This document shows positions 445 through 43,709 of a stretch of DNA of 64,000 bases, one piece after another. The translations under genes were made by a program, and so were the position numbers. Under the pieces are notes generated by a model. The model was not told the DNA's origin, made no database searches, and worked only from the letters and a program-made list of their open reading frames with translations. The stretch covers positions 62,001-126,000 of the IMG/VR virus record IMGVR_UViG_3300027771_001853, one strand, 5' to 3'. Position 1 is the stretch's first letter, and each line of letters begins with the position of its first letter.

Positions 445-475
445 CAAATATACTGATTTATCTTTAAATTACAAA
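445..475 (-). promoter_or_regulatory. Bacteroidota-type primary-sigma promoter (-33 TTTG / -7 TAnnTTTG)
   Basis: Minus strand reads TTTG-taatttaaagataaatcag (19 nt)-TATATTTG, about 35 nt upstream of the DUF932 ATG. Confidence 0.75.
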
Positions 476-476
476 G

Positions 477-650
477 TTAATTCACTTTATTTTTAATATT
501 TCTTAGAACCACACAAATCTCATATCTTTCCTCAAATTCAAAAAATTTCATAAGATTAGTAATTTCACCGTAATAAGGACTTGATACCCTATTTAGACAT
601 AAATCATAGAACATCTGAATATTTACGTTGTAGTCGTCTCTAAACATCAT
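477..650 (-). CDS. small protein (57 aa) with UVR-like C-terminal motif, abutting clpP
   Basis: Manual translation MMFRDDYNVNIQMFYDLCLNRVSSPYYGEITNLMKFFEFEERYEICVVLRNIKNKVN*; ATG directly follows the clpP stop. Confidence 0.6.
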   Translation of the reverse strand: MMFRDDYNVNIQMFYDLCLNRVSSPYYGEITNLMKFFEFEERYEICVVLRNIKNKVN

Positions 651-1334
651 CTACTTCTTAATTTCTCTCTTAGATTTTACAATATCGTCAATGATACCAT
701 ATTTCTTAGCTTCTTCCGCATTTAACCATAAATCTCTTTGGGCATCCTTTTCTACTCTTTTTGCTGTTTTACCACAGTATGCCCCTAGTAGTTTAAATAA
801 CGTATCATTTACGTTTTCCCATTCTTTCATGGTAATTCTTGCGTCTTGTATATTACCTACAGCTCCACCACTTGATTGGTGTAACATTGTTCTACTAAAC
901 CTTAAGGAGTACCTTTTTCCTTTGGTCCCGGCTCCTAATATTAAGGACCCCATTGATGCTGCCATACCGGTATTGATTGTTACTATGTCTGGTTTTACGT
1001 AATCCATAACATCTATAATGCTTAGACCAGATTTAACTGAACCACCTGGACTATCAACATGCATTGTTATATCGTCGTCACTTACACTATCTAAAAACAT
1101 TAGTTGTGCTTGTACCACAGTAGACATTCTGTCATTTACTTCACCTGCTACCCATAATAATCTATCCATCATTAATCTAGAAAACACGTCCATAGCTGTA
1201 ACATTTAATTGTCTTTCTTCTAAAATTAATGGTGTTAAACTATTTTCTATGTGTTGTTGGTATTGGTGTTGTTCTAACCCACTTATGCCGTGATTGTGTA
1301 ATGCGTATTTTTCAAATTCTTTTTTTATATCCAT
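651..1334 (-). CDS. clpP: ATP-dependent Clp protease proteolytic subunit
   Basis: MDVFSRLMMDR, SPGGSV, GMAASMG (catalytic Ser), MLHQ (His), RDLWLNAEEAKKYGIID. Confidence 0.96.
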   Translation of the reverse strand: MDIKKEFEKYALHNHGISGLEQHQYQQHIENSLTPLILEERQLNVTAMDVFSRLMMDRLLWVAGEVNDRMSTVVQAQLMFLDSVSDDDITMHVDSPGGSVKSGLSIIDVMDYVKPDIVTINTGMAASMGSLILGAGTKGKRYSLRFSRTMLHQSSGGAVGNIQDARITMKEWENVNDTLFKLLGAYCGKTAKRVEKDAQRDLWLNAEEAKKYGIIDDIVKSKREIKK

Positions 1335-2510: not shown

Positions 2511-2539
2511 ATAGTAGAAAAAATAAATTTGAAGGTAAA
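2511..2539 (-). promoter_or_regulatory. sigma70-like promoter upstream of metK
   Basis: TTTACC-N17-TACTAT followed by tagaaaaaaa; the promoter at 17911-17939 has the same downstream tail. Confidence 0.45.
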
Positions 2540-2546
2540 CTTATAA

Positions 2547-3173
2547 CTATGTTATATCGTTAGATTCAATTAAGGTGTAAGAAAATGAGTTACCGTGAAT
2601 ATCTCTAGCTTTCTCACATATAGCTAAAAATTTCTTCCAATCATCATTAGATGAGATTACTTGACACCCAGCTGACCACTTATCCACATAAGTAGAAGTT
2701 TTTCCAGCTTTAGATGTTGCTCTATGAATATTGATTCCAAATAAACCCGTATCTGTTGTTGCTTCATTTCTATCGTATTTACCATCACGGTCATTGTCTC
2801 TATACACTGTCACATCTTTCTTTTGACCTAACGCTAAATATTTTCCTGCGTGTAATCTTAATTTGTGAGACCCTCTATATTGACCTTCTTTTAAGATAGC
2901 ACACCCTTTTTCTTTAACTATTGGGTCGTCCATGTAATTATCCCCTGGGTCGGTTGTAGCTTCAAAACAAAAGAATTTCCACTCACCATTTTTTTTATAT
3001 GAAACTGTAACACAATCATCAAACCTGTTAGTTACTCTGTCTTTCGTTGAGGAGTTTCTGATTCCCACTATATTAACATCGTACCCTTTATTGTCTGAAT
3101 CATCAAACCATTTGTATCCTTTTTCTTTTACGGTGGTTTCTATCTGTTCTCTAGTGTAGCAATTTTTCGCCAT
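2547..3173 (-). CDS. YkuD/L,D-transpeptidase-like peptidoglycan enzyme (candidate endolysin)
   Basis: GINIHRA...KWSAGCQV His/Cys catalytic-type motif; NIVGIR, TTDPG, FSYTLI motifs. Confidence 0.65.
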   Translation of the reverse strand: MAKNCYTREQIETTVKEKGYKWFDDSDNKGYDVNIVGIRNSSTKDRVTNRFDDCVTVSYKKNGEWKFFCFEATTDPGDNYMDDPIVKEKGCAILKEGQYRGSHKLRLHAGKYLALGQKKDVTVYRDNDRDGKYDRNEATTDTGLFGINIHRATSKAGKTSTYVDKWSAGCQVISSNDDWKKFLAICEKARDIHGNSFSYTLIESNDIT

Positions 3174-3207: not shown

Positions 3208-4332
3208 TTATAAATAGTTCCACAAAAGGTCTTGGAACAAATCATTTACCTCATCGTCATCCCAAGGATAGTCATCTACAGCAGGACAAAGAGAATCCAG
3301 GTTAAATTCTTTTATCATTTCTAAAAAATTGTCAGGACTATCAATCTCATACGCATGTCTAACTATCATTGCTCTTGCTCTATCTGTTACGTCAAAATAT
3401 TTTACAGGGACTTCTACTTTTGTCCATTTATTTTTACCAGTTTCTTGATTCATTACATCCTTATAGGTGTTTGTCGTTCCTTGACCTATTGGTTTACCTA
3501 AAAAATCCTCAAATTCTTTATAGTATGAAGTATAGTATTGATTTTGTACAACTTCATTCCATGCACTACCATAGGCAGTCTTTATTTCGTTCTCCACATC
3601 TTCTAGTTCAGGTGTGTTACCTATAAGAACAGCCAAGTTATATCTATCACCACCTAAAAAACCATTCATCCTGTTAAGAGTTAAAAAAACCTTACCTTCT
3701 GGTAGTTGGTCCTCTTCCCTCCAACTATCAAATTCCTCCCTCCAAGCGGTTACTTCCTCATTTTGGAACTCACCACCAATATACCTTACTAGTTTTATGT
3801 AATTTTCTTCTGTTAGTAAATCTAATAACTCCTCTATGTTCATATCTGAATCATAAGGTTCCCAATCCAAATAACCATCACCAAATATTTGTTTTGCGAC
3901 TTCATTACAATCAATACTACTACCCCTATAACCCCCATCAAAAAATTCAGCTTCTTCACCAGGCATTAACTCTAAGATAATTCTATCATTCTTATCTTTA
4001 CCGATAAACCTCATGTCGTCCAAGTAAGGTTCAATCACATATTCATCCATCAAATCATTATCAACCGCACCATTGTTCCAAGCTCTAATTCCTCCTAATG
4101 CGTTAATGATATGTTCTAATACTCTTTCCTGTGGCCATTGGGAGGACATGTGGTCTAAGAAGTCTCGACCCTTCCCAAGTTTATCTAAGGCATTATACAA
4201 TTCATGTATATCACCACCAAATAGTTTTATAAGAGGCCAAATATCTTCTATCTCACTACTTTGGAATACCTGTTCTGACCAAGGCGTGGTTTTTTCCACT
4301 AATAAAGCTGATACCGTTTGGATAAGTTTCAT
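3208..4332 (-). CDS. highly acidic hypothetical protein with LLVE N-terminal leader
   Basis: 374 aa ORF, D/E-rich; begins MKLIQTVSALLVEK; TATTTAT at 4337-4343 upstream. Confidence 0.75.
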   Translation of the reverse strand: MKLIQTVSALLVEKTTPWSEQVFQSSEIEDIWPLIKLFGGDIHELYNALDKLGKGRDFLDHMSSQWPQERVLEHIINALGGIRAWNNGAVDNDLMDEYVIEPYLDDMRFIGKDKNDRIILELMPGEEAEFFDGGYRGSSIDCNEVAKQIFGDGYLDWEPYDSDMNIEELLDLLTEENYIKLVRYIGGEFQNEEVTAWREEFDSWREEDQLPEGKVFLTLNRMNGFLGGDRYNLAVLIGNTPELEDVENEIKTAYGSAWNEVVQNQYYTSYYKEFEDFLGKPIGQGTTNTYKDVMNQETGKNKWTKVEVPVKYFDVTDRARAMIVRHAYEIDSPDNFLEMIKEFNLDSLCPAVDDYPWDDDEVNDLFQDLLWNYL

Positions 4333-4347
4333 ATTAATAAATACAAC

Positions 4348-4483: not shown

Positions 4484-4708
4484 TTAGTCTTTTAGGTATT
4501 TGTCAAAAGTCCCACCTTTTACTTCATCCATAAACAATTTAAATTGTTCTTTAGTAAATGTAGTGTACCCTTCTTCTTTCCCACCTATTACAACATTATC
4601 TCTATCTTCGTCAATATCGATTGCTGGGCATTTACAACTTCCTTTCCCACAAAATGTAATTTCTAGTCCAGTAGAACTATAACTGTTTGGTAAATTTGTA
4701 TTAATCAT
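4484..4708 (-). CDS. DUF397-like small protein
   Basis: CGKGSCKCPAIDI...VVIG...FTKEQFKLFMDEVKGGTFD resembles the DUF397 pattern (C..CVEV...F...W..F...VK.G.F). Confidence 0.5.
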   Translation of the reverse strand: MINTNLPNSYSSTGLEITFCGKGSCKCPAIDIDEDRDNVVIGGKEEGYTTFTKEQFKLFMDEVKGGTFDKYLKD

Positions 4709-4792
4709 AACTTTTTTTTTAAATAATATATCGTTTTATACATTAAATAAATACTAACCCATTTAAATTATTCCTCCATTGTGCTTAAGAGA

Positions 4793-4799
4793 TATTTAT
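4793..4799 (+). promoter_or_regulatory. TATTTAT putative late-promoter motif (representative copy)
   Basis: 15 nt upstream of ATG 4815. Same motif in sense orientation at 3210-3216, 4337-4343, 4747-4753, 8195-8205, 10587-10593, 12798-12804, 20712-20718, 23982-23988, 25399-25405, 32506-32512, 43685-43691. Confidence 0.6.
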
Positions 4800-4814: not shown

Positions 4815-6617
4815 ATGTTATTAACTGAAAATAGGGTCTCCAAAGTAAAAGAAATGTACAACATACCGTCGGAGGTATGGGAACCTATGGTTACCGGTAG
4901 TGCTGCTATTTCACCTAATCAAAAATATTTAGAGTGGATTGCTAAACAATGGGAGGGAGCTACATTATCACCAGAAGATTCTGGTACTCGTAATTATGTT
5001 GGTGGTACCCTTCCTGGTTTACTTACTACTGTAGAAGAATTTGATAGGGTAAGACCTAACCTTAAAAAGAAAGATTTGTATCAATATCGTGATAGACAAG
5101 AGGTAATCGATAGTCTAGAAGGTTATAAATTGGAGAAGATTAGGAATATAGAAACCCATGATGAGTCTGAGGTGGTGTACGAAAATAATAGATTCAAGGT
5201 AGTTGTCCCTAAGTCCCATACCGCATCATGTTATTATGGTGCTGGTACCAAATGGTGTACAGCTTCTAAAGGAAATCCAAATCATTTTACCAACTACGAT
5301 AAAGCGGGTAAATTGTTTTATATTTTGGATAAACAGGCACCAACATCCAGCCTTTACTATAAAGTTGCTTTAAATAAAACCTATAAAGGTGGTGATACCT
5401 GGTATGACGCAATAGATGATGTAATGACAGCATCTAATTTAGATGGGTATATTGATACGTTAAATAAATTCGAAATAATTAATAAGATTAAAGAATATTT
5501 TAAATTTACATATGATGATGAAATTTCAAAAATAAGTGATGAAGAAAAACAACGGGAATTAGAAAGGATAGCTAGAGAAGCTGAATGGGCACAAAGAAGG
5601 AGAGAGAGAGAACAACGTCTTGAAACTGTAGCGAACCAAAGAAGAGCTTCTGATGCCTGGAAACCTGGAGAGGGTGGGACTTTAGGTGAATTGGCTAATG
5701 CGTTAATGGAATGGTTAAAAGATAACGATAAGTGGGATACTGACAATACCGAAGCGATTGGCGATTTAGTTGGTGAAATTGAGTCCATGCGTAATGATAT
5801 GGAAAATGACCCTGATGTTATAGCTGACATTGATGGTGAAAGAGCACAGGATTATGGTCAAGACTTGGGGAATCTAGAGGATAGTCTTGAGTCACTTAGG
5901 AATGAAAAACATGACGTATACGACCTGAGACAAGACGAAAGTAGTCATTATGGTTTACCTATATTTGAATATAACGATGAGGAGTATTCTATAGGTGACG
6001 ATATTATGGCAAATGAAGCAGCTTGGGACCAAGTCGATAATCTATTAGATGATATTGGTTTTAATGGGTTTTCAGCTGGGATGATGGAATGGTATGTAGA
6101 TGGTGAGATGGTAGCTGATGATTTTGAAAGTATGTTTTACGATGATGTATCAGATTCACCTGAAGATTATTTAGATGTGGATGATGATAGAGAACTAACT
6201 GATACTGCTGTAGAACAACTAGAAGCTATGAGTGAACAAATTGGTGAATACCAAGTTGAGTTGGAGGATACAGACATTAGTGACGAAATAGATAGAGAAT
6301 ACCTAGTTGACCAAATAGAAGCATTAGAAGAGGCTAAAGTGGATTTAATGGATGATGAAGATAGTTACGAGTGGACAGAATACGCTAAGGAGGAATACGT
6401 GAAGAGAAGACTTGACGAGGTTAGAAATGACCCCGTAGAGTTCCTACAAGATTATGGTTACGGTACGGAAACTTATGAACGATATATAGATAGAGATAAA
6501 TTTATAGAGGGTGTTATAGATGCTGATGGTAGAGCTAATGGACTTTCTTCCTATGATGGGGAAGAAGGTGAGGTTTCCTATGGGGGTGACTGGTATTACA
6601 TTTATAGGTTAAATTAA
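4815..6617 (+). CDS. SCxYG-WCT (PcfJ-like) core protein with very acidic C-terminal half
   Basis: MLLTE leader; NQKYLEW, KKDLYQY, SCYYGAGTKWCTAS, GKLFYI; C-terminal ~300 aa strongly D/E-rich. Confidence 0.75.
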   Translation: MLLTENRVSKVKEMYNIPSEVWEPMVTGSAAISPNQKYLEWIAKQWEGATLSPEDSGTRNYVGGTLPGLLTTVEEFDRVRPNLKKKDLYQYRDRQEVIDSLEGYKLEKIRNIETHDESEVVYENNRFKVVVPKSHTASCYYGAGTKWCTASKGNPNHFTNYDKAGKLFYILDKQAPTSSLYYKVALNKTYKGGDTWYDAIDDVMTASNLDGYIDTLNKFEIINKIKEYFKFTYDDEISKISDEEKQRELERIAREAEWAQRRREREQRLETVANQRRASDAWKPGEGGTLGELANALMEWLKDNDKWDTDNTEAIGDLVGEIESMRNDMENDPDVIADIDGERAQDYGQDLGNLEDSLESLRNEKHDVYDLRQDESSHYGLPIFEYNDEEYSIGDDIMANEAAWDQVDNLLDDIGFNGFSAGMMEWYVDGEMVADDFESMFYDDVSDSPEDYLDVDDDRELTDTAVEQLEAMSEQIGEYQVELEDTDISDEIDREYLVDQIEALEEAKVDLMDDEDSYEWTEYAKEEYVKRRLDEVRNDPVEFLQDYGYGTETYERYIDRDKFIEGVIDADGRANGLSSYDGEEGEVSYGGDWYYIYRLN

Positions 6618-8185: not shown

Positions 8186-8215
8186 ATCATAAAGTATTTA
8201 TTTATAAAATAAGAT

Positions 8216-10141
8216 ATGAGTTTTACTGGATGTAGACCGGGTGAAAATTGTTCGGATTACGGTTATATTTTTAATGATGTATTACCCCCAAATATTGTTG
8301 ATGGGTTAAACGAATTATATGGGTGTGGCATCAACCCTTACTCTTTTATTGATTGCAGTATTTTAACTGGTTGTACTAGTGTGTTAAGTGGTTTAACTGG
8401 CCCTTATATAACTGGTGCTACCTACAACCCTATTAGTGGTTGTCTTACGTTTTTTAGACAAAGTGGTGCCACATTTAGTACATGTGGTTTTTTAACGGGT
8501 GCAACTTCTACAAGTAGTAGTTACTGGTCTGCTGGAACTAGAGGTATTACGTATACCGGAGGGTCTAGTACCTATGTCGGTGTTGGTACTGAGGACCCTA
8601 ATAAAACTTTAACTATTAAGGGTAGTGTGTCCGCTACTACCACATTGGATGTGGATGGAAACACAACCTTATCAACACAATTAAACATTAGTGGTAATAC
8701 AGTTACTTCAGGTAACATATCTTTAACACAAGATAGTTATTTGTATTTTGGGTATGATGTGAATAACCAAACATACATTAGAGAAGATGGGAGTAATTTA
8801 GTGATTGATGCTAACGATGATATACTCTTAAGACCCGATGATGATTTAAAAATAGCTTATGGTAGTACACAATATGCCTCATTTGATGGTTCAAAATCTT
8901 CTTTAGTTATTGGTACTACGGTTGTACCAAACTCTAGATTAACTGTAGATGGTACTCAAAGTGGTTCAGTTAGTTCTATTGCTGAGGCCAATGACCCAAC
9001 GAGTTCCGTAGCACTGGCAAATTTCTTTAATACAAGGTCCGGTACAGTGAGTACCGCTAACCTATTTATAGGTGAGAAAAGAAGTTCTGGGACAGGTGAT
9101 TTCTTTATATACCCACAAGGTACAAACGCAGAAATTTTAATTAATAGTGATTTAGTTCTTGGAGCTTACAAGGCTGGGACCCTATACTCTAGTGAACTTT
9201 TAAGATTAAAAGGTAGTACTGCTAGGGTAGGTATTAAGAATGTTTCACCTGCTTTTGATTTGGATGTTGGTGGTTCCCAAAATGCAACTACAATATATAG
9301 TGCTGGTACCGAATTAAGTTTATTATTTAGAATGAGTAATAGGGGGCATTGGTCAGCTAACACAGCTGGACTAATATACACTGGAGGCACATCAACTACA
9401 GTAGGTATTGGTACTTCGGTACCTAACAAAGAATTAACAGTTATAGGTTCTGTTTCAGCCACGACTGATATGTATGTGGGTAATGATTTAAAGGTTAGTG
9501 GTAATTTAGGTATTGGGGTGACCCCTACTAATGCGTTACACATATCTACAGCTGATAATGTAGTAGCGAAAATTATTAGTACGGACGCTACAGCAACAAT
9601 TGAACTTAGTGATAGTAACACCACCAATGCCGCAGCTTTTAAAAGAGTAACAGATAATTTACAATTCGTTCCAAACGGAGGTAATGTAGGTATAGGTACA
9701 AGTCCAGTAACCAAATTAGATGTACATCACGACCCAACTGATATAAGTGATAATACTGGTGGTGGTGACGTAATTACTTTTGGTATTGAGTCGAACGCAA
9801 ATAGTTTATCTGCTGGAACACTAATGTGGTTACATACTGACGGTTACTGGTATAACACAGATGCTGACAATGTTGCGAGTGGTGCTACTAATTTAATAGC
9901 TATAGCTTTAGGGACCGCAGTAAGTGACGGAATGTTAATTAATGGTTATTACGACTACAGTTCAAATCTCCAGGGGACCTTCGCTAAAGGTATGGCATGT
10001 TATGTGTCAGAGAATGCTGGATTTGTGGATTTTACTGCACCTTCTGGTACTTACGATTATGTAAGAATCTTAGGTTATGGGACAGATAAAGTTAATATAA
10101 TATACTTTAACCCTGATAAGACTTGGGTTGAGTTGTCTTAG
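8216..10141 (+). CDS. fibre protein (tail or head fibre) with VGIGT repeats
   Basis: Repeated VGVGT/VGIGT..P motifs, G/S/T-rich beta composition, internal duplication WSA..G..YTGG.ST.VG.GT..PNK.LT..GSVSATT. Confidence 0.7.
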   Translation: MSFTGCRPGENCSDYGYIFNDVLPPNIVDGLNELYGCGINPYSFIDCSILTGCTSVLSGLTGPYITGATYNPISGCLTFFRQSGATFSTCGFLTGATSTSSSYWSAGTRGITYTGGSSTYVGVGTEDPNKTLTIKGSVSATTTLDVDGNTTLSTQLNISGNTVTSGNISLTQDSYLYFGYDVNNQTYIREDGSNLVIDANDDILLRPDDDLKIAYGSTQYASFDGSKSSLVIGTTVVPNSRLTVDGTQSGSVSSIAEANDPTSSVALANFFNTRSGTVSTANLFIGEKRSSGTGDFFIYPQGTNAEILINSDLVLGAYKAGTLYSSELLRLKGSTARVGIKNVSPAFDLDVGGSQNATTIYSAGTELSLLFRMSNRGHWSANTAGLIYTGGTSTTVGIGTSVPNKELTVIGSVSATTDMYVGNDLKVSGNLGIGVTPTNALHISTADNVVAKIISTDATATIELSDSNTTNAAAFKRVTDNLQFVPNGGNVGIGTSPVTKLDVHHDPTDISDNTGGGDVITFGIESNANSLSAGTLMWLHTDGYWYNTDADNVASGATNLIAIALGTAVSDGMLINGYYDYSSNLQGTFAKGMACYVSENAGFVDFTAPSGTYDYVRILGYGTDKVNIIYFNPDKTWVELS

Positions 10142-10527
10142 TTAAGACCCACATACCCATAACCGGGTATCTCTTGGAATGGTCCGTCAGGTATGTCACT
10201 TTCTTCAATTCTTTGAGGAATAACTTTTAATATGGGTGTACCATCTTCATTAACACCCACAATCTTTACCATATCCTTAGCTATTAATTCTTTAAGTTCA
10301 TACCTAATGTTTTGTTGTATTACGTCTTGTATCACTTCTGCTATCTCTTGTTTTGTTAAGGTTGGGTCCCCGTGAGTTTCATAATTCTTTGTAGCTACCT
10401 CTTCTAAACCCTCGTAAAACATATCCTCATCAGCATATGGGATATTGAACATTTGATTTCTAGCGTTTTCATTGGTCTCAAAAAAATTCCTAATGTTAGT
10501 TATGTATATTTGAATGTCTATTTCCAT
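10138..10527 (-). CDS. hypothetical protein
   Basis: 129 aa ORF; TATATTTG -7 element at 10554-10561 upstream. Confidence 0.7.
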   Translation of the reverse strand: MEIDIQIYITNIRNFFETNENARNQMFNIPYADEDMFYEGLEEVATKNYETHGDPTLTKQEIAEVIQDVIQQNIRYELKELIAKDMVKIVGVNEDGTPILKVIPQRIEESDIPDGPFQEIPGYGYVGLN

Positions 10528-10609
10528 TATTTATAAATATTAATAAGTTCATACAAATATAAAAACTTTTTTCTTTAATGTCATAATATTTATAATTAAA
10601 GATATTAAT

Positions 10610-11506
10610 ATGAGTAACCATAAAATTATACTTACCCCGGAACAAATCAAATACGTCTTAAAAGAAAGTAAAGGCAAGAATAACAATAAGGACGAAAAAC
10701 TATTGACTGAAGTTGATTGGAATTTTGTCGCTGATATAGTTGGTATTGTAGACCCTACAGGTGTTGTGGATTTAGCAAATGGTATATCTTACGCAACTCA
10801 AGGAAGATGGTTATTTGCTTTTTTAAGTTGGGTAGCTATAGTCCCTTACGTGGGTGATGCGGTAGCTAAACCTTTTTCTTTCATGTTAAGGGGTAGTAAA
10901 GGTGCTATTAAAAGTGTTGATGCCGCAATCAAAACTGGTAAAGCTGCTAATGTGTCAGCAGCACTAGGTAAAGCTGGTGTTAAAGAAGGTGCGGAAGCTT
11001 TCGTTAAGGGAGCGACAAAACCTATGGAAGGGATATTAACAAAACTAAAAAAAGTCCCTTTGTTTGGTACGGTTGCAAAAGACGCTGGGAAATGGTGGAA
11101 AATTTTCTCTACAGGGGCTGTTATGAAATCCTCACTTAAAACGACTAAATTAGGTACGGTCACTGGTTTAGGTATAAGAAGAGGATTTGCTAAAGCAGCT
11201 ACTAAACTTACTAGTGGTAATAAAAATGTAGTGTCAGCCTCAATAGCTTTAATGACCCCAAGTGCTTTAAGGACTTTAGGTTTTAGAACTAAAATGTATG
11301 GTAGATTAGCTGGTGTTGGTACCGGTGGTGAAAAGGCTGGTGTAATGGGGGATTTTCTAGAAACCTCTGAAGGTGAACAATGGTGGGATGGTTTAAGTGA
11401 TGACCAACAAAACCATTTAACTAGTCAAGAAACTGTAGAAGAAGGAGGTGAAGGTAAAAGTAATGATGAACTTATGAAGATTTTATCTAAACTAGTTTCA
11501 TCTTAA
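10610..11506 (+). CDS. pre-toxin TG (PT-TG)-like domain protein with N-terminal leader
   Basis: ADIVGIVDPTGVVDLANGISYATQGRWLFAFLSWVAIVPYVGDAVAK resembles pre-toxin TG hairpins; leader MSNHKIILTPEQIKYVLKES...LLTE. Confidence 0.6.
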   Translation: MSNHKIILTPEQIKYVLKESKGKNNNKDEKLLTEVDWNFVADIVGIVDPTGVVDLANGISYATQGRWLFAFLSWVAIVPYVGDAVAKPFSFMLRGSKGAIKSVDAAIKTGKAANVSAALGKAGVKEGAEAFVKGATKPMEGILTKLKKVPLFGTVAKDAGKWWKIFSTGAVMKSSLKTTKLGTVTGLGIRRGFAKAATKLTSGNKNVVSASIALMTPSALRTLGFRTKMYGRLAGVGTGGEKAGVMGDFLETSEGEQWWDGLSDDQQNHLTSQETVEEGGEGKSNDELMKILSKLVSS

Positions 11507-12783: not shown

Positions 12784-12837
12784 AGTATTGTTTATTAATA
12801 AATATTGTCTAATTGTGAATTTACCTACCTGTGTGAA

Positions 12838-13122: not shown

Positions 13123-13180
13123 TTTAATTTTATTTTTTGATTAGACTTCTTTTAATAGTACAAATATAAATATAAATAAG

Positions 13181-17897: not shown

Positions 17898-17910
17898 GTA
17901 TTTTTTTCTA

Positions 17911-17939
17911 ATAATAATAGTAATAAGTTTTATTGTCAA
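17911..17939 (-). promoter_or_regulatory. canonical sigma70-like promoter
   Basis: TTGACA-N17-TATTAT, 13 nt upstream of ATG 17897. Confidence 0.65.
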
Positions 17940-20693: not shown

Positions 20694-20735
20694 AAGTGGA
20701 TACTTTAGTATATAAATACATTAATTAATCGGTAT

Positions 20736-23966: not shown

Positions 23967-23992
23967 GTTTATTTATTAACTATAAATAGTTA

Positions 23993-24787
23993 TTAATCCA
24001 TATAATCAAGAAGAGTTTCACTTTCGTTTCTTAATTTCCTTAACGCTTTCTCTTTTATTTGTCTTACCCTTTCTTTAGTAAGACTAAAATCTAAACCAAT
24101 ATCCGATAATGTTTTAGGTACACCCATTAAACCAAAATAATCCACAACTATTATTTTCTCTCTTTCATCCAAAACATTTAGTATACGTTTTAACTCTGAC
24201 TTTAGACTTTCTTTGGTTTGGAATACATCTTCTGGGTTATCCGCTTCTTTGTTTTCTATTAAATCTAATATAGTGTCACCATCTTCATTTATAGGTCTAT
24301 CATATTTAAAAGTTGTGGGTAAACTTTGTAATTTAGCGTCCAACTCCTTCCCTTCCTGTTTAAGTACTTTTTTAGCCTTTTGTAAGTCTTGTACAACATT
24401 AGCTGGTAACCTAATTGTTCTAGAATGTTCATTTAAACATTGTAATATAGATTGTTTTACCCACCATACAGCGTATGATATAAACCTATACCCCCTAGAC
24501 CAATCAAAATTCTTTATAGCCTTTAACAAACCAAAATTCCCTTCAGCTATTAAATCAGCTAAAGGTATTCCCTGGTTTTGATATTCTTTTGCTACGGTAA
24601 TAACGAATCTTAAGTTCCCTATTATGATTTCGTTCTCAACAGCAGCTTTTTCTAGGTCTGTAGGGTCGTTTTGTATAATTTTAGATATTTCTTTTTCTCT
24701 AGCTGGTGTCATCACTTTTAACTTACGTAAGTCTTTTAGGTATTCAGCTATCTCTTCTTGGTTGATGTGGTAGTTACTTTTTGCCAT
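23993..24787 (-). CDS. RNA polymerase sigma-70 family factor (RpoD/SigA-like, no region 1.1)
   Basis: NLRFVITVAKEYQNQG..LADLIAEGNFGL.KA, FISYAVWWVKQSI, RTIRLP, LTKERVRQIKEKALRKLR. Confidence 0.95.
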   Translation of the reverse strand: MAKSNYHINQEEIAEYLKDLRKLKVMTPAREKEISKIIQNDPTDLEKAAVENEIIIGNLRFVITVAKEYQNQGIPLADLIAEGNFGLLKAIKNFDWSRGYRFISYAVWWVKQSILQCLNEHSRTIRLPANVVQDLQKAKKVLKQEGKELDAKLQSLPTTFKYDRPINEDGDTILDLIENKEADNPEDVFQTKESLKSELKRILNVLDEREKIIVVDYFGLMGVPKTLSDIGLDFSLTKERVRQIKEKALRKLRNESETLLDYMD

Positions 24788-25361
24788 AATTTTTTAAAAA
24801 TTTTAATTCTACTTTAGTTAGTGATTCTTTTCCGTTTTCCAGTATTTTATCAAGTATAGTGTCTAAATCATATTTAATAATTTCATGAGGTTCTTGTGGG
24901 TCCCAATTTTCTTTATCTATGAAGTTTTCTTCCCAATTACCAAATTCTTTAAACAACTTTGAGATTTCTCCTTTGAATAGGTCGTCTATCTTTGGGACTC
25001 TATTTGTACCTTCTGGTTTCGGGTTTTCATATTTAAAAAAGGGGTCAGTGTTTTTATCTAGTTTAAATATGTGTTCTTCTAAGTCATCATCTAAACGATA
25101 CCCCATATTTCTAGGTGTTGGTATTAAGAAAAAAGCTGTAACCTCTTTACCGAAACTTATCTCTATATACGTTGTTATCTCAACTAAGGTTTCATAAGAT
25201 TGGAAGTGAGCGATTAATGACCTCTCCCCATATATGAATTTTAGGTACTTACTCTCCATAACAGGTTTCATTATTTCTGAAACCTCTTTTGTTATATGTG
25301 CTAATGTTTCCCATTCTCCGTATAGAAACAACATATACTTTTTTCTTCTTCCTTTTTTCAT
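24774..25361 (-). CDS. hypothetical protein with C-terminal DUF6576-like motif
   Basis: C-terminus LDTILDKILENGKESLTKVELKFL. Confidence 0.6.
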   Translation of the reverse strand: MKKGRRKKYMLFLYGEWETLAHITKEVSEIMKPVMESKYLKFIYGERSLIAHFQSYETLVEITTYIEISFGKEVTAFFLIPTPRNMGYRLDDDLEEHIFKLDKNTDPFFKYENPKPEGTNRVPKIDDLFKGEISKLFKEFGNWEENFIDKENWDPQEPHEIIKYDLDTILDKILENGKESLTKVELKFLKNYGKK

Positions 25362-25386: not shown

Positions 25387-25417
25387 CAAAAGTACTAATA
25401 TTTATTTAATGTACAAA
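25387..25417 (-). promoter_or_regulatory. Bacteroidota-type promoter driving the DUF6576-sigma factor operon
   Basis: TTTG-N19-TACTTTTG on the minus strand, 25 nt upstream of ATG 25361. Confidence 0.7.
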
Positions 25418-25465
25418 TATTGTACCATTAATAATTTTTACAAATATACAGAAATTTTGTCATAT

Positions 25466-26849: not shown

Positions 26850-26863
26850 TTTTTTACTTTTTT

Positions 26864-32499: not shown

Positions 32500-32535
32500 A
32501 ACATCTATTTATATGTAGAAATATAACACTATTAA

Positions 32536-33915: not shown

Positions 33916-34828
33916 TTAACTCACTTTCTTTTATTAACATATCTTCAGTTATATTACCTTTAATATCACAAACATCTTTATTTTTAGGTAACCTTATAAG
34001 TTTAATCCTATCCTTTAATTTCCCACCATCTAATTTCCTATATAGCTCAACACTATCTTTCCAAGCGTCAGAATCTAAACATATGTATATATCCTTAGTA
34101 CTTTTATCGTATAGTTTAGACCACAGGTTATCTGTTATATTTTTACCCAATAAAGGGATAGCGTTATCTAAAAAAAACATATCAAAAACACCCTCAACCA
34201 AATAAATGTCTTTACCCCACTCTATAAGGTGTTCATTAAATATTATTTTTTCTTTTGCTGCTTTAGGGTTTTTATATTTAAGTTTGTGATTAACAAAACT
34301 CCTAGCGACAAAATAATTAACATTACCTTCATCGTCATAAGATGGTACTATTATTCTATGACTATGTTTACCTTTTCTGGTGAACCCTATACTAAACTTG
34401 TCGATGATTTTTTTGGTGATGGCTCTTTTTCTTAAGTAACTTATAGCCTCTTTGTATGGTATACTGTGTTTTGAACAATCTTCAAAAGATTCGTATTCTG
34501 TAGGTAGGGTTACTGGTTTTTCAAACTGACTCTCTGTTTCATATTCGTCCGTAACTAGTAAGTCATACTGATTTAGGTGTCTTCTAGCACCAAATTTCCT
34601 AACTAATTTACGAATCCTTCCTTTAGTACCATCTGTCTCACCACATGACCAACAATGGTACACACCTTTACTGGTATTTACCTCTAAATTACCTTTAAAA
34701 TCCCTATCTAATCCTTTGTCTTGAGAACAAACGGGACAACTAAATCCGTATTGATAATTACGGGATACCTTATCTGGTTCCCCCAACATATCAACTAATA
34801 TTTCGTATATAAGTGAATCGTCTGACAT
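33905..34828 (-). CDS. DNA primase (Zn finger + TOPRIM)
   Basis: CPVC...HCWSC zinc finger, RIIVPSY, YFVARS, KYKNP, LVEGVFD, CLDSDA. Confidence 0.92.
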   Translation of the reverse strand: MSDDSLIYEILVDMLGEPDKVSRNYQYGFSCPVCSQDKGLDRDFKGNLEVNTSKGVYHCWSCGETDGTKGRIRKLVRKFGARRHLNQYDLLVTDEYETESQFEKPVTLPTEYESFEDCSKHSIPYKEAISYLRKRAITKKIIDKFSIGFTRKGKHSHRIIVPSYDDEGNVNYFVARSFVNHKLKYKNPKAAKEKIIFNEHLIEWGKDIYLVEGVFDMFFLDNAIPLLGKNITDNLWSKLYDKSTKDIYICLDSDAWKDSVELYRKLDGGKLKDRIKLIRLPKNKDVCDIKGNITEDMLIKESELIIL

Positions 34829-34834: not shown

Positions 34835-34863
34835 AATGTAACTATAGTTAGTTAGACTGTCAA
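34835..34863 (-). promoter_or_regulatory. sigma70-like promoter of primase with palindromic spacer
   Basis: TTGACA-N17-TACATT; perfect 12-bp palindrome TAACTATAGTTA at 34839-34850. Confidence 0.6.
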
Positions 34864-41174: not shown

Positions 41175-41177
41175 ATT

Positions 41178-43667
41178 TTAAAAGTCAACTTTGATAACAT
41201 ATTGCTGTGAACCGATTCTTGTTTGTGGACTTTTAAGTTTTCCTATAGCTAATAAATCTTTGTTATTATCAAATAACCCTACTTCCGTAACTCTAACTTT
41301 ACTTGTTGAGTTCCAAGTTGGATTTAGTGATGTAACAAATTGACTGGAATTTAATGTAACATGATATCTCATTTCATATATCGTAGCCATTATATCAGAA
41401 TTTAAGTTGCCGAAGAAAAAGTAATTGTCACCAAACTGTAGTAGATTTGGTTCTTGGCTATTGTTTAATGGAATGTTTATATAATCATGTAAATTATAAT
41501 ATGTAGCTGCACTAGTATTCCATTCCCCTAGTATGTAGCTACCTGTACCTGTAACTAAATTTTTAGCTTCAATAGGAAGACCTACTGTGTGTGTCCCACC
41601 TATTTGGTTTGTAACATCAACTTCAAACCATTGTCCTGGAGATGGTCTATCCCCTAAGGCTGTTATCTGGTATAACACTTTTAAAGTATGAGCTTGCCAC
41701 CCTGTACCCGACATAGATGTGGTACAAGCGGTCATAGTGATTGGTCTTAGGTACGGAAATTCAGCACCAAACGACACCGAAATATCTCTATTACCCATAG
41801 TGGTATCTAAACCTCTCATAATGTTATAGTAATTACAATGTAACCCAGTAGTCATACCGGATAAATTTTGTAATTGGTATGTAAGGTAAAGTTGTTTTTG
41901 TGATGCTATCATTGGTGGGTCAGTTATCACACCACCTAAGGTACCACCAACACAACTAATACCTGGTTCTATAAGTTCTACTTTTGGCATTGGTAATGTC
42001 CAATTCCTCCTAGACTTCATATCTAGGGATGCACATATTTCTTCATCATCAAAAGTTATTATTTTAAGGTCTGGCCAAACTTTACCTACCCTATTAGGTT
42101 TTGAACTCTGCCCTGTTAAATCCCTTACCGGGTTGTTATCCCATAAATGGTAATATCTCAACCCTGGGTCATTCATATCCGGATTAGGGTTAGATTGCAT
42201 GTATTGCACACCTACCTCATTAAACACATTAAATCCTGGTGGGTCTACCCAAAAACATTGACCTATTTCACACTGGTCACCTAAACCAGTACTAGGGTCA
42301 TATGGTACAGAAGCATTTACAGCTGCACTAGCAGTTATTTTCTTGTGCCACATTAACCAAGGTATACAAATTTTAAAATTCTTAGCCTCACCATACCCAT
42401 TTAACTGAGTCCCAGCTACTTCCATAGCAAGTTTTTCACCATAGAAATTAGATATAGTTTGGTTGGTGTAGTGTAGTATCGCTATACATTTTTGGTCCTC
42501 CGGTAATACCGCTCTAACTTTACTAAAAGAATCTCTAACGAATGTTCCAGAAATAATAGATGGGTAATAATCGTCTGGTTGTTGTGTTGTATCAAATTGT
42601 CCCGAATTACTGTTATACCCTAGGTATTCCTTGGTACCACAGTAACCACTTGAACCATAGGTATCTACACTACCATATGTACTTGTATCTACACCAGCTA
42701 ACGTTTCAGTCCAGTTTATATTCATATTCCACATTGGAACATCAGCAACAGAAATATCACAATTATTCTCAAATGATAATGAACCTGGTGACCAATACGG
42801 TACTGGTGTTGTAGCACCGTAATAATTATTCATTGGTCCTGAAGGCATTATTAACGCGTTAACACAGTGTGTTGATGTTGTAGATGCTGAGTAGGGATGT
42901 ACACCACTTCCTCCAGCAGCTGCTGCCCAATTTGGTAGGTAGTCACCAACTGGAAGATACACTTCGGTACCAGTTAAATTACCACCACTAGAAAACTCAG
43001 TAGCTGTATTAGCTGATGTCGCTCCCGACATAAATTGATACCACAGGTAAGGGTTGGCTTGGGTTATATCGAAGGGTAACATACTATCCCAACATCCTGT
43101 ATTTGCTGAAAATAACCCGTCATATTGTATTAGTATAAAATCACCCGGTTGTGGGTAATATGTGTTGGATGTACCGCAATTGGTCACACCACTTAATAAA
43201 GTAATGTATGTCCCACCTGTCATAGCAGATACAGGGAAACACCAATTAGACGATTGGACATAAGTAGAATTGGTGAACGCACTGTATTCACTACCTTCTG
43301 TTTCTGTAGCAGAACTAAAAAAACCTCTAGTTTTTGCTCTATTATATACCGTTGTTTCTGTATGTGCTGGCGTAAGTAAACCATATGTCGACCCACTTTG
43401 TTGTGCCGTAATAGGTATAGGATATTTTACGTTTGCTTTATTTCTTTCATTCGCAGAATTAGAAATATTCTGTGCGTTATATTCTGGTCTTAGTATATTA
43501 ATCCCCGAGGATTCAGGTAAACTATTGGTGTAACAGTCATAACACATCTCACTATCCCCTAATTGGAATAACGAAAAGTTAAGCTGTCCTTGTGATAATT
43601 TTTTCCTACCTGCGTCGGTTAACCGAACGGCTAACAAGCCTGAAGTGCTTTTTATTAGGTAACTCAT
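41178..43667 (-). CDS. virion structural protein (baseplate/tail-collar-like)
   Basis: N-term LTDAGRKKLSQG..FQLGDSE and C-term VRVTEVGLFDNNKDLLAIGKLKSP; TATTTAT at 43685-43691. Confidence 0.7.
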   Translation of the reverse strand: MSYLIKSTSGLLAVRLTDAGRKKLSQGQLNFSLFQLGDSEMCYDCYTNSLPESSGINILRPEYNAQNISNSANERNKANVKYPIPITAQQSGSTYGLLTPAHTETTVYNRAKTRGFFSSATETEGSEYSAFTNSTYVQSSNWCFPVSAMTGGTYITLLSGVTNCGTSNTYYPQPGDFILIQYDGLFSANTGCWDSMLPFDITQANPYLWYQFMSGATSANTATEFSSGGNLTGTEVYLPVGDYLPNWAAAAGGSGVHPYSASTTSTHCVNALIMPSGPMNNYYGATTPVPYWSPGSLSFENNCDISVADVPMWNMNINWTETLAGVDTSTYGSVDTYGSSGYCGTKEYLGYNSNSGQFDTTQQPDDYYPSIISGTFVRDSFSKVRAVLPEDQKCIAILHYTNQTISNFYGEKLAMEVAGTQLNGYGEAKNFKICIPWLMWHKKITASAAVNASVPYDPSTGLGDQCEIGQCFWVDPPGFNVFNEVGVQYMQSNPNPDMNDPGLRYYHLWDNNPVRDLTGQSSKPNRVGKVWPDLKIITFDDEEICASLDMKSRRNWTLPMPKVELIEPGISCVGGTLGGVITDPPMIASQKQLYLTYQLQNLSGMTTGLHCNYYNIMRGLDTTMGNRDISVSFGAEFPYLRPITMTACTTSMSGTGWQAHTLKVLYQITALGDRPSPGQWFEVDVTNQIGGTHTVGLPIEAKNLVTGTGSYILGEWNTSAATYYNLHDYINIPLNNSQEPNLLQFGDNYFFFGNLNSDIMATIYEMRYHVTLNSSQFVTSLNPTWNSTSKVRVTEVGLFDNNKDLLAIGKLKSPQTRIGSQQYVIKVDF

Positions 43668-43709
43668 TCTTAATCTATTTTATGATAAATATTATTCATA
43701 TCTGTTATT

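What the first reader, a model, noticed from the sequence alone, without database searches (positions are those of the whole stretch)
445..43691. Three distinguishable promoter classes suggest a temporal programme
Seen: (i) host-type TTTG-N19-TAnnTTTG at 445-475 and 25387-25417, the latter driving the phage sigma operon, with -7 elements also at 10554 and 13161; (ii) TTGACA/TTTACC-N17-TAnnnT at 2511, 17911 and 34835 (metK, Hc1 operon, primase); (iii) TATTTAT before structural, lysis and leader genes. Class iii is the reverse complement of the core of the T4 late promoter TATAAATA. Inference: host sigma transcribes the phage sigma, which reads class ii and/or iii.
Basis: partly seen in the sequence, partly recalled or inferred. 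Interest (0 to 1): 0.6.

Follow-up and report, generated by a model that had tools for sequence, protein, structure and literature searches.

The report
Three promoter classes in a jumbo phage
An uncultured 298-kb marine T4-like phage that probably infects Flavobacteria carries three real, conserved promoter-like motif classes that fit an early, middle and late programme run by the host sigma and two phage sigma factors, though no transcript data exist to prove the timing.

Summary
In sense-oriented upstream regions each of the three motif classes far exceeds dinucleotide shuffles, both in this genome and in two relatives with about 46% protein identity.

- Class I, TTTG-N19/20-TAnnTTTG: 5 sites against 0.1 expected.
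- Class II, TTGACa/t-N17-TAnnnT: 11 against 0.7.
- Class III, TATTTAT: 65 against 13.

TATTTAT is directional: 47 sense against 8 antisense in gaps between co-directional genes. It is also the rarest of its 21 same-composition 7-mers inside genes, and it is kept in front of orthologous genes (p = 2e-8).

The window lies in a T4-like jumbo myovirus of the recently described "moraphage" type. No RNA polymerase gene was detected with Pfam models.

The class I box upstream of the sigma operon is conserved in most related viral contigs, so host sigma-A very probably makes the phage sigma. I assign class II (in front of the DNA polymerase, primase, metK and Hc1 genes) to the RpoD-like sigma in the window. 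I assign the class III promoters, which lack a -35 element and sit in front of the sheath, tube, gp25, protease, terminase and amidase genes, to the gp55-like sigma.

These assignments and the timing are inferred, not shown. The result is a new variant of a known kind.

The parts
445..475 (-). Class I host-type promoter, TTTG-N19-TATATTTG, 34 nt upstream of the DUF932 gene (3-410, which runs off the window).
   Evidence: Exact match. It lies in a 66-nt intergenic gap. DUF932: PF06067, E 1.5e-24. The orthologues in G1 and G3 also carry a TATCTTTG box upstream.
25387..25417 (-). Class I host-type promoter, TTTG-N19-TACTTTTG, 25 nt upstream of the sigma operon. A further TATATTTG box lies at 25441-25448(-).
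   Evidence: The equivalent position in most related viral contigs holds TAtaTTTGTAgAAC about 22 nt before the ATG.
24774..25361 (-). First gene of the sigma operon: 195 aa, function unknown, with a weak sub-threshold DUF6576 match. Its end overlaps the start of the sigma gene by 14 nt.
   Evidence: PF20216, 25.5 bits, below the cut-off. An ORF of roughly 110-230 aa (mostly 170-200 aa) precedes the sigma gene on the same strand in all 80 related loci.
23993..24787 (-). Phage sigma-70-family factor, 264 aa, RpoD/RpoS-like, with regions 1.2 to 4.2.
   Evidence: Pfam r2 and r4. PDB SigA/RpoD, E 1e-41. The best NCBIfam hits are RpoD and RpoS but fall below the equivalog cut-offs. 235 viral contigs hold relatives. 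Regions 2.3/2.4 and 4.2 are invariant across 21 homologues.
10554..10561 (-). Class I -7 box TATATTTG(TA) in the divergent gap 10528-10609, 26 nt before gene 10138-10527. It has no TTTG at the -33 position.
13161..13168 (-). Class I -7 box TATATTTG(TA), 38 nt before gene 12838-13122. It overlaps two TATTTAT copies at 13166-13178.
   Evidence: The G3 orthologue has both class I and class III motifs upstream.
2511..2539 (-). Class II-like site, TTTACC-N17-TACTAT, 13 nt before metK (1346-2497). The -35 is weak. Downstream it shares the sequence TAnTATTAGAAAAAAA with the 17911 site.
   Evidence: metK identified. The loose pattern is common (25 in the window), so this site rests only on its position and on its likeness to the 17911 site.
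17911..17939 (-). Class II promoter, TTGACA-N17-TATTAT, 13 nt before a small ORF (ATG near 17897), followed by the Hc1 gene at 17503-17676.
   Evidence: Hc1: PF07432, E 9.4e-18.
34835..34863 (-). Class II promoter, TTGACA-N17-TACATT, 6 nt before the primase ATG (33905-34828). The predicted mRNA has almost no leader.
   Evidence: primase identified. The G3 orthologue has TTGACA-N16-TATCTT and G1 has TTGATA-N17-TATCTT.
23982..23988 (-). Class III TATTTAT, 15-18 nt before the 449-aa gene (22617-23966), which is followed by the Amidase_2 endolysin gene (22049-22675).
   Evidence: Both orthologues also have class III.
43685..43691 (-). Class III TATTTAT, 17 nt before the 829-aa gene at 41178-43667.
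   Evidence: Class III is conserved at the orthologues in G1 and G3.
4337..4343 (-). Class III TATTTAT, 4 nt before the ATG of gene 3208-4332, a leaderless-type spacing.
4747..4799 (.). Divergent pair of class III boxes: 4747-4753(-) faces gene 4484-4708 and 4793-4799(+) lies 15 nt before gene 4815-6617.
   Evidence: The G3 orthologues of both genes have class III.
8195..8205 (+). Two overlapping class III boxes (TATTTATTTAT), 10-14 nt before gene 8216-10141.
10533..10593 (.). Divergent class III boxes: 10533-10539(-) lies 5 nt before gene 10138-10527 and 10587-10593(+) lies 16 nt before gene 10610-11506.
12798..12804 (-). Class III box, 14 nt before the LRR-containing gene 11503-12783.
   Evidence: The G3 orthologue has class III.
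3210..3216 (-). Class III box, 36 nt before gene 2547-3173. It sits at the end of the upstream gene.
   Evidence: The G1 orthologue has class III.
20712..20718 (-). Class III box, 18 nt before gene 20379-20693.
25399..25405 (+). Class III box, 3 nt before ORF 25409-25801(+), which is divergent from the sigma operon.
   Evidence: The G3 orthologue has class III.
32506..32512 (+). Class III box, 23 nt before gene 32536-33915(+).

Best explanation
The window belongs to a 298-kb marine T4-like jumbo myovirus of the 'moraphage' type. Its predicted hosts are Flavobacteriia. No RNA polymerase gene of its own was detected, and it appears to re-programme the host core enzyme in three steps.

1. **Early.** Host sigma-A holoenzyme reads Bacteroidota-type promoters, TTTG-N19/20-TAnnTTTG(TA). 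These precede the operon encoding an unknown 195-aa protein and an RpoD-like phage sigma. They also precede chaperone and accessory genes: DUF932, Hsp20, ClpB and a denV-like gene.
2. **Middle.** The RpoD-like phage sigma has invariant -10 and -35 recognition helices. It directs the core enzyme to canonical TTGACa/t-N17-TAnnnT promoters, which lack the TTTG that the host sigma-A -7 box contains. These promoters precede DNA polymerase B, primase, glutaredoxin, metK and the Hc1 operon.
3. **Late.** A second, gp55-like sigma lies outside the window at genome 212380-213078. It reads the -35-less box vTATTTAT(A/T), with the start site predicted 5-6 nt downstream. This box precedes the sheath, tube, gp25, prohead protease, terminase and amidase genes and about 60 other genes.

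Many class I and class III promoters sit 4-6 nt from the ATG, which predicts leaderless mRNAs.

**Shown:** the motifs, their enrichment, strandedness, spacing and conservation, and the two sigma genes.
**Inferred:** that the motifs are promoters, which sigma reads which class, and the order in time.
For: **Motif reality**
- Enrichment over shuffles in three genomes.
- TATTTAT is the top strand-biased intergenic 7-mer in all three: 47:8, 63:9 and 32:7.
- TATTTAT is the rarest or second-rarest of the 21 T5A2 7-mers inside genes.
- Class III is kept at orthologues that share only about 46% protein identity. G0-G3 gives 19 both / 3 / 0 / 17 neither, p = 2e-8; G0-G1 gives p = 2e-4.
- Class II spacer is N17 in 17 of 24 intergenic sites (p = 2e-4), whereas genome-wide matches are near uniform.
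- Class I TTTG-to-box spacer peaks at 19-20 nt, as in Flavobacterium sigma-A promoters (PMC9723704).

**Cascade**
- The class I box upstream of the sigma operon is conserved in relatives.
- The window sigma is RpoD-like, with an invariant region 4.2 'LTKERVRQIKEKALRKLRN' and an invariant 'SYAVWW.KQ'.
- Class III shows no information upstream of the box.
- The second sigma matches:
  - Pfam r2 at 22 bits
  - phrog_234 'late sigma', E 5e-4, the only hit in the genome
  - gp55 (7d7c_F) by sequence, E 0.1, in a consistent register
  - gp55 by fold, Z 8.0 with 130 of 137 residues aligned, among hits that are all sigma factors
- The second sigma is conserved in four relatives.
- The genome is T4-like: gp20 portal, gp21 protease, gp17-type terminase, gp18, gp19, gp25, PolB.
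- No Pfam RNAP beta, beta-prime or T7 RNAP hit. This agrees with the moraphage paper (PMC12619734) and with the two sigma types described for group 2 jumbo phages (PMC7824862).

**Function split**
- Class I: sigma operon, Hsp20, ClpB, DUF932, Pyr_excise.
- Class II: PolB, primase, glutaredoxin, metK, Hc1.
- Class III: sheath, tube, gp25, protease, TerL, amidase operon.
Against: - There is no transcript evidence at all. Only DNA metagenomes hold the phage.
- The function split is not clean. In this genome class II also precedes the portal gene and a T4-baseplate gene, although this is not conserved. Class III precedes a DnaB-like helicase in all three genomes.
- Class II is not kept at orthologues in the more distant relative G1 under the strict pattern (0 of 5).
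- ClpB is class I here but class II in G1.
- Class I and class II share the same TTG-to-TA geometry (TTG-N20-TA). The phage sigma might therefore read class I as well, or host sigma-A might read class II.
- I could not compare the phage sigma with a Bacteroidota sigma-A sequence.
- The gp55 likeness is weak by sequence. The Z score of 8 is in the range common for helical folds. The protein also has an extra C-terminal helical part that gp55 lacks.
- No gp45 clamp (PF02916) and no gp33 were detected.
- No promoter could be assigned to the gp55-like gene, which sits inside a packed operon of about 30 genes.
Confidence: 0.55

Rival explanations
1. The RpoD-like window sigma reads class III (TATTTAT) as its -10 element, with or without class II. 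The gp55-like protein would then have another role or a minor one. This is the other half of the reader's 'and/or'.
For: - Class III is by far the most common phage-specific motif, with 58-66 genes.
- The RpoD-like sigma is a strongly conserved core gene made from a host-type promoter.
- The gp55 assignment of the second sigma is weak by sequence.
Against: - TATTTAT does not fit a sigma-70 -10 hexamer. With TA at -12/-11, position -7 is A rather than the required T.
- No -35 or extended -10 (TG) signal accompanies it. Yet the sigma's region 4.2 helix-turn-helix is invariant across the family, which argues that it is used.
- A canonical two-block class with an N17 optimum exists and otherwise has no reader.
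Confidence: 0.15
2. There are only two real programmes. Class II is read by host sigma-A, or the phage RpoD-like sigma is a stand-in for sigma-A that reads both class I and class II. Classes I and II would then be one early/middle class with variable -35 and -7 strength, followed by class III.
For: - Both classes have the same geometry: TTG-N19/20-TA against TTGACA-N17-TA, which equals TTG-N20-TA.
- The class I -10 part TAnnTT also satisfies TAnnnT.
- One G1 site carries both TTGACA and TAAATTTG.
- ClpB switches between class I and class II in different genomes.
- The phage sigma is about the size of the short Bacteroidota primary sigma (from memory, not tested here).
Against: - Class II sites lack the TTTG that defines the host sigma-A -7 box (PMC9723704).
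- Class I sites show no ACA after the TTG.
- The gene sets differ: replication genes against chaperones and the sigma operon.
- A phage would gain little from a sigma with the host's own specificity.
Confidence: 0.2
3. TATTTAT is not a promoter. It would instead be another cis signal, such as an RNA processing site, a translation-initiation enhancer for mRNAs without a Shine-Dalgarno sequence, or a binding site for a regulator.
For: - It lies very close to start codons, with modes at 4-6 nt and 13-18 nt.
- Bacteroidota lack Shine-Dalgarno sequences and use A/T-rich leaders (PMC6847099 abstract).
- No start-site data exist.
Against: - The distance to the ATG is bimodal and ranges up to about 50 nt, unlike a ribosome-positioning element.
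- The box faces each gene in divergent gaps.
- It is depleted on both strands inside genes.
- The A-rich patch 5-7 nt downstream coincides with the position of the A of the ATG in the closely spaced sites. That is what a fixed start site would give.
- It matches the T4 late box at 6 of 8 positions, in a T4-like genome that has a gp55-like gene.
Confidence: 0.1

Closest known systems
Phage T4 late transcription: gp55 with gp33 and the gp45 clamp, acting at TATAAATA
   Same: - The genome backbone is T4-like.
- A small sigma-2-type factor matches the gp55 family.
- The late-type box is AT-only, about 8 bp, has no -35 element, lies a few nt upstream of the start, precedes virion genes and occurs dozens of times per genome.
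   Different: - The box is TATTTAT(A), not TATAAATA. It differs at 2 of 8 positions in the same orientation.
- The gp55-like protein is 232 aa and has an extra C-terminal helical domain.
- No gp33 or gp45 homologue was detected.
- No MotA/AsiA-type middle system was looked for. A full-length sigma may do that job instead.
Bacillus phage SPO1 sigma cascade: host sigma-A, then gp28, then gp33/34
   Same: Early genes, read by the host primary sigma, include a phage sigma gene. Successive phage sigmas then redirect the host core enzyme to new promoter classes.
   Different: - The phage lineage and host phylum are unrelated.
- Here the first phage sigma is RpoD-like and the presumed middle promoters look like the canonical bacterial consensus.
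- The late factor is of the T4 gp55 type.
Group 2 jumbo phages with two sigma types (Iyer et al. 2021, PMC7824862) and 'moraphages' (Perez-Hernandez et al. 2025, PMC12619734)
   Same: - No phage RNA polymerase.
- One minimal sigma plus one RpoD-like sigma.
- T4-type capsid and PolB.
- Bacteroidota hosts predicted.
- Genomes of 200-307 kb, with Hc1, chaperones, ClpA/B, glutaredoxin and primase in the core.
   Different: Text searches of those two papers turned up no promoter motifs or temporal classes for this lineage. The three consensus sequences and their gene sets are new here. I did not test membership of this genome in the moraphage clade phylogenetically.
Bacteroidota sigma-A promoters: -33 TTTG and -7 TAnnTTTG
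   Same: Class I has the same -7 box, the same 19-20 nt spacer and the same box-to-start geometry. The box lies at -12 to -5 in F. psychrophilum (PMC9723704), and here a sharp mode of 4 nt separates the box from the ATG.
   Different: About 17% of class I sites here are in the leaderless arrangement, against 5.5% leaderless mRNAs reported for F. psychrophilum.

Membership tests
Bacteroidota sigma-A-type promoter (class I) | A -7 box TAnnTTTG. | tested here: met
   Present at 445, 10554, 13161 and 25387. Enriched in sense upstream regions: 21 against 8.6 expected, and 11 against 1.6 for TAnnTTTGTA.
Bacteroidota sigma-A-type promoter (class I) | A -33 TTTG about 19 nt upstream of the box. | tested here: met
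   The spacer histogram peaks at 19 (21 sites) and 20 (13 sites) out of about 62 TTTG occurrences. The TTTG is absent at 10554 and 13161.
Bacteroidota sigma-A-type promoter (class I) | Transcription starts about 5 nt after the box and depends on host sigma-A. | not testable with these tools
   No RNA run holds the phage. There is only indirect support: 11 of 64 boxes lie exactly 4 nt before an ATG.
Canonical sigma-70 -35/-10 promoter (class II) | TTGACA-like -35 and TAnnnT -10 with a 17±1 bp spacer whose optimum is 17. | tested here: met
   11 against 0.7 expected, with 1 in antisense. 17 of 24 intergenic sites across three genomes have N17, p = 2e-4.
Canonical sigma-70 -35/-10 promoter (class II) | Read by a group 1/2 sigma with intact regions 2.4 and 4.2. 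| tested here: inconclusive
   Such a sigma is encoded and its DNA-reading helices are invariant. Which promoters it reads was not testable.
Sigma-70 family, group 1/2 (window gene 23993-24787) | Regions 2 and 4 present, with overall likeness to RpoD/SigA. | tested here: met
   PF04542, E 5e-15; PF04545, E 1e-13. PDB SigA/RpoD, E 1e-41 over residues 7-264. The NCBIfam RpoD and RpoS models are the best hits but fall far below the equivalog cut-offs. It is therefore a diverged member, not an orthologue of RpoD.
T4 gp55 late sigma family (genome 212380-213078, outside the window) | Sequence membership in the gp55 family. | tested here: inconclusive
   phrog_234, E 4.7e-4, residues 65-163 against profile positions 69-159, and the only match in the genome. 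PDB gp55, E 0.1 to 0.4 in the same register. Pfam Sigma70_r2 at 22 bits, below the cut-off.
T4 gp55 late sigma family (genome 212380-213078, outside the window) | A sigma-2-like fold superimposable on gp55. | tested here: met
   AF2 model with pLDDT 78. By VIA-align, sigma-E region 2 scores Z 9.0 and gp55 (7d7c_F) scores Z 8.0 with 130 of 137 residues aligned. All top hits are sigma factors. Z of about 8 is not decisive for helical proteins.
T4-type late transcription system | A gp33 co-activator and a gp45 sliding clamp are present. | tested here: not met
   PF02916 (gp45 N-terminal domain) has no hit. The 122-aa neighbour of the gp55-like gene has no gp33 match in the PDB. These homologues may be too diverged to detect, so absence is not shown.
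T4-type late transcription system | A -10-only AT-rich box without a -35 element, upstream of virion genes. | tested here: met
   No information content upstream of the box. It precedes the sheath, tube, gp25, gp21-type protease, TerL and amidase-operon genes. The box sequence differs from TATAAATA.
Moraphage lineage (PMC12619734) | Genome of 200-307 kb, T4-like core genes, sigma factor, Hc1, chaperones, no RNA polymerase, Bacteroidota host. | tested here: met
   297.6 kb. Core genes found. No RNAP hit. Placement of this genome in a phylogeny with the 25 published genomes was not done.

The most novel reading that the evidence does not exclude
A large, widespread clade of aquatic Bacteroidota phages carries its own RpoD-like sigma. 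That sigma would make the host core polymerase read the canonical TTGACA-N17-TATAAT promoters, which the Bacteroidota primary sigma is reported not to use. The clade then switches to a gp55-like sigma with a new -10-only specificity (TATTTAT) that often yields leaderless mRNAs. If so, the middle step of the T4 programme (MotA/AsiA) has been replaced by a whole sigma. The pair 'phage sigma plus TTGACA promoter' would then be a ready-made orthogonal expression switch for Bacteroidota.
Probability: 0.4. Interest if true: 0.65.

Novelty: new variant of a known kind. Interest (0 to 1): 0.5.

Why it matters
- **A testable transcription map.** The sigma has relatives on at least 235 IMG/VR contigs, and the gp55-like protein has about 8000 database homologues. 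The phage itself appears in marine metagenomes from 15 studies. The one paper I found on the matching lineage (moraphages, PMC12619734) notes only that a sigma factor is a core gene.
- **How a T4-type phage adapts to a different host.** It suggests how such a phage copes with a host phylum whose primary sigma has an unusual specificity.
- **Concrete reagents for experiments.** The analysis yields three consensus sequences and two sigma genes for in vitro work, and possibly for genetic tools in Flavobacteria.
- **Better annotation of related genomes.** The motifs can guide gene-start and operon calls. For example, the 17911 site corrects an ORF start.

Tried and rejected
- **No close annotated relative.** megablast of 20 kb and tblastn of the 2739-aa ORF against GenBank phages gave no match.
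- **Large ORFs stay unannotated.** PHROGs and Pfam on the ten large - strand ORFs at 35461-64000 found nothing except a weak SprB repeat. 'Structural' therefore stays unverified inside the window.
- **Bacterial relatives of the sigma.** The genome-contig scan returned only three hits; the two close ones sit on short contigs of MAGs.
- **Profile search with the gp55-like protein.** A profile of five close homologues searched against the PDB did not improve on the single sequence. Foldseek gave only weak full-length sigma hits. VIA-align on the same set was more informative.
- **RNA evidence.** No RNA run holds the stretch.
- **Promoter of the gp55-like gene.** None was found in five genomes.
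- **gp45 and gp33.** Not detected.
- **Complex prediction.** Prediction of the sigma with its upstream 195-aa neighbour gave no verdict (score 0.02). This is no evidence either way.
- **Literature.** A search for a structure of Bacteroidota sigma-A bound to a promoter found none.
- **Gene-caller errors.** My greedy ORF caller mis-called the region 17.6-18.4 kb and so missed the 17911 site in the genome-wide counts. I also first miscounted the permutations of TATTTAT as 35. There are 21, because the 7-mer is T5A2.

Full report
**What the window is**

The 64-kb window is bases 62001-126000 of a 297,623-bp IMG/VR virus record estimated to be 93% complete. GC content is about 34%, and the standard code gives 96% coding density.

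Pfam identifies T4-type core genes across the genome: gp20 portal, gp21-type prohead protease, T4-type large terminase, tail sheath, gp19 tube, gp25 wedge, a T4 baseplate protein and family B DNA polymerase. It also identifies chaperone and auxiliary genes: DnaJ, ClpP, Hsp20, ClpB, metK, CysK and Hc1.

No Pfam RNA polymerase beta, beta-prime or T7-type hit exists. The phage occurs only in marine DNA metagenomes, from 15 studies.

All of this fits the 'moraphages' described in 2025: 200-307 kb, predicted Flavobacteriia hosts, a sigma factor and Hc1 in the core genome, and no RNAP (PMC12619734). It also fits 'group 2' jumbo phages, which carry a minimal sigma and an RpoD-like sigma (PMC7824862).

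**Checking the observation**

Inside the window alone the full class I pattern is not significant. There are 2 matches against 0.59 expected, and 13 of 100 shuffles reach 2. TAnnTTTG alone is at chance.

The signal lies in position and strand. I took the sense-oriented upstream regions of all genes with an upstream gap of at least 25 nt and compared them with 300 dinucleotide-preserving shuffles. All three classes are strongly enriched in this genome (G0) and in two relatives fetched whole: G1 (290,887 bp) and G3 (190,908 bp). Their orthologues share only about 46-48% protein identity with G0.

| Class | G0 observed / expected | G1 | G3 |
|---|---|---|---|
| I, full pattern | 5 / 0.1 | 9 / 0.3 | 7 / 0.1 |
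| II | 11 / 0.7 | 7 / 0.8 | 5 / 0.5 |
| III | 65 / 13.3 | 77 / 12.6 | 37 / 6.8 |

No shuffle reached any observed value.

**Class III (TATTTAT)**

- It is the most strand-biased 7-mer in gaps between co-directional genes in all three genomes: 47:8, 63:9 and 32:7.
- Of its 189 copies in G0, 75 lie within 60 nt upstream of a gene start in sense orientation. The next-best 7-mers of the same composition reach at most 35, and those are shifted versions of the same motif.
- Inside genes it is the rarest (G0, G3) or second-rarest (G1) of the 21 T5A2 7-mers, and it is low on both strands.
- Aligned sites show no information upstream of the box, so there is no -35 element and no extended -10 TG. There is a non-T base just before the box, A or T just after it, and an A-rich patch 5-7 nt downstream.
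- Distance to the ATG is bimodal, with modes at 4-6 nt and 13-18 nt. In the close mode the A of the ATG falls exactly where the A-rich patch lies in the far mode. A fixed start site 5-6 nt after the box would give this pattern, and it predicts leaderless mRNAs for the close mode.
- Presence of the box is conserved at orthologous genes. For G0 against G3, among pairs that both have a gap, the counts are 19 both, 3 G0 only, 0 G3 only and 17 neither (p = 2e-8). For G0 against G1 they are 15 / 3 / 3 / 13 (p = 2e-4).
- First genes behind the box with a recognisable function are tail sheath, tail tube, gp25, prohead protease, large terminase, the operon containing the Amidase_2 endolysin (box at 23982 in the window), and also a DnaB-like helicase and a DHH protein.

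**Class I**

The -7 box here is usually TAT(A/C)TTTGTA. The spacer from an upstream TTTG peaks sharply at 19-20 nt. This matches the sigma-A promoter of Flavobacteria, whose box lies at -12 to -5 (PMC9723704). Eleven of 64 boxes lie exactly 4 nt before an ATG, which again predicts leaderless mRNAs.

The site at 25387-25417 lies in the 47-nt gap before a 195-aa ORF whose end overlaps the start of the sigma gene by 14 nt, so the two genes form an operon.

The sigma has relatives at 62-69% identity on 235 viral contigs. In all 80 loci fetched it is preceded on the same strand by an ORF, mostly 170-200 aa. In most of the roughly 50 non-redundant loci, the region upstream of that ORF holds TAtaTTTGTAgAAC about 22 nt before the ATG. 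That is strong comparative support for 'host sigma-A makes the phage sigma'.

Other class I genes are DUF932 (site 445-475, conserved in G1 and G3), a divergent Hsp20/ClpB pair, a pyrimidine-dimer glycosylase-like gene and several small ORFs.

**Class II**

The intergenic sites read TTGAC(A/T)-N-TA(t/a)(a/c)(a/t)T. Seventeen of 24 sites have a 17-bp spacer (p = 2e-4), while genome-wide matches, which are mostly intragenic, show no such preference.

In G0 these sites precede PolB, primase, a DUF7788/DUF2828 protein, glutaredoxin, the Hc1 operon (17911) and, with a weak TTTACC -35, metK. They also precede the portal gene and a T4-baseplate gene.

Conservation at orthologues holds for PolB, primase and DUF7788 in G3 (p = 0.004). 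Under the strict pattern it does not hold in G1, although the G1 primase has TTGATA-N17-TATCTT.

Class II is therefore real but small, and its conserved core is the replication genes. The metK site rests mainly on its position and on a shared downstream sequence with the 17911 site.

**Which factor reads which class**

The window sigma (264 aa) is a full sigma-70-family protein. Its closest relatives are RpoD, SigA and RpoS: PDB E 1e-41, with the best NCBIfam hits below the equivalog cut-offs. Across 21 homologues at 62-92% identity, the region 4.2 recognition helix (LTKERVRQIKEKALRKLRN) and the region 2.3/2.4 core (SYAVWW.KQ) are invariant. In one PDB alignment the canonical counterpart reads TRERIRQIE. 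A sigma that preserves both reading heads is expected to use a two-block promoter, not the -35-less class III.

A genome-wide scan found a second sigma-like gene outside the window, at genome 212380-213078, encoding 232 aa. The evidence on it is:
- It hits phrog_234 'late sigma transcription factor' at E 5e-4, and is the only such hit in the genome.
- It hits T4 gp55 in the PDB weakly but in a constant register.
- Its AlphaFold model (pLDDT 78) aligns only with sigma factors. Sigma-E region 2 scores Z 9.0, and gp55 scores Z 8.0 with 130 of 137 residues aligned.
- It is conserved at 54-70% identity in four relatives.
- It has about 8000 database homologues, mostly marine and unnamed.

In a T4-like genome the natural reading is that this protein is the late sigma and TATTTAT(A) is its box. 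The box matches T4's TATAAATA at 6 of 8 positions in the same orientation.

**Caveats**

- Classes I and II share the same TTG-to-TA distance: TTTG-N19/20-TA against TTGACA-N17-TA. They differ only in whether the ACA of the -35 or the TTTG of the -7 box is present. The phage sigma may therefore also read class I, or host sigma-A may read some class II sites.
- I could not obtain a Bacteroidota sigma-A sequence for comparison.
- No gp33 or gp45 homologue was detected.
- No promoter could be assigned to the gp55-like gene.
- No RNA data exist.
- About 40% of upstream gaps carry none of the three motifs.
- A complex prediction for the sigma and its upstream neighbour gave no verdict and is not evidence either way.

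**Verdict**

Host-type promoters for the sigma operon are well supported. The split 'RpoD-like sigma reads class II, gp55-like sigma reads class III' is my best inference, at about 0.55. The temporal order is inferred only from gene functions and from analogy with T4 and SPO1.

Two sigma types in such phages were already known (PMC7824862), and the lineage itself was described in 2025 without promoter analysis. The new content is therefore the three consensus sequences, their conservation, the canonical -35/-10 class in a Bacteroidota phage and the leaderless arrangement. This is a new variant of a known kind of system.

Noticed in passing
window 24774-25361 (-): An ORF (195 aa here, mostly 170-200 aa elsewhere) of unknown function precedes the sigma gene on the same strand in all 80 related loci. 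It has a weak sub-threshold DUF6576 match, and here it overlaps the sigma start by 14 nt. It could be a partner or regulator of the sigma. Complex prediction gave no verdict.
   Followed up: partly
genome 212380-213078 (-), i.e. locus L008:7380-8078, outside the window: A second, gp55-like sigma of 232 aa with about 8000 mostly marine, unnamed homologues. It has an extra C-terminal four-helix part that T4 gp55 lacks.
   Followed up: yes
window 13371-14546 (-): The protein matches the Druantia defence protein DruA (PF14236, E 1.4e-23). It is encoded by a phage.
   Followed up: no
window 35461-64000 (-): A run of very large ORFs (up to 2739 aa and 1139 aa) with no PHROG or Pfam match apart from a weak SprB repeat at 45223-47547. 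They are presumably virion or fibre proteins but remain unverified.
   Followed up: partly
window 651-1334, 1346-2497, 14860-15840, 25812-27754; genome 253999-256729: Host-like auxiliary genes: ClpP, metK, DnaJ, dTDP-glucose 4,6-dehydratase and cysteine synthase, plus a divergent Hsp20/ClpB pair whose two genes each have a class I promoter.
   Followed up: partly
window 445-479 and 25387-25448 (-): In both full class I promoters the -33 TTTG is itself the end of a second TAnnTTTG-like box (TAACTTTG; ATATTTG). This gives tandem boxes about 27 nt apart, and the sigma promoter has a third box at 25441-25448.
   Followed up: no
window 17682-17939 (-): The listed ORF starts at a TTG inside the class II promoter. 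The promoter position indicates that the real start is the ATG near 17897 (MRIVNV...). Longest-ORF calling is wrong in the region 17.6-18.4 kb.
   Followed up: partly
genomes G0, G1, G3 (loci L100-L124): In G1 the ClpB orthologue carries a class II promoter instead of class I. PolB and a 143-aa gene carry TATTTAT there instead of class II. Promoter class can therefore switch between relatives.
   Followed up: partly
loci L093, L094 (genome contigs): Close relatives of the phage sigma (59-62% identity) lie on 3-4 kb contigs binned into Dehalococcoidales and Alphaproteobacteria MAGs. These are most likely phage fragments that were mis-binned.
   Followed up: no
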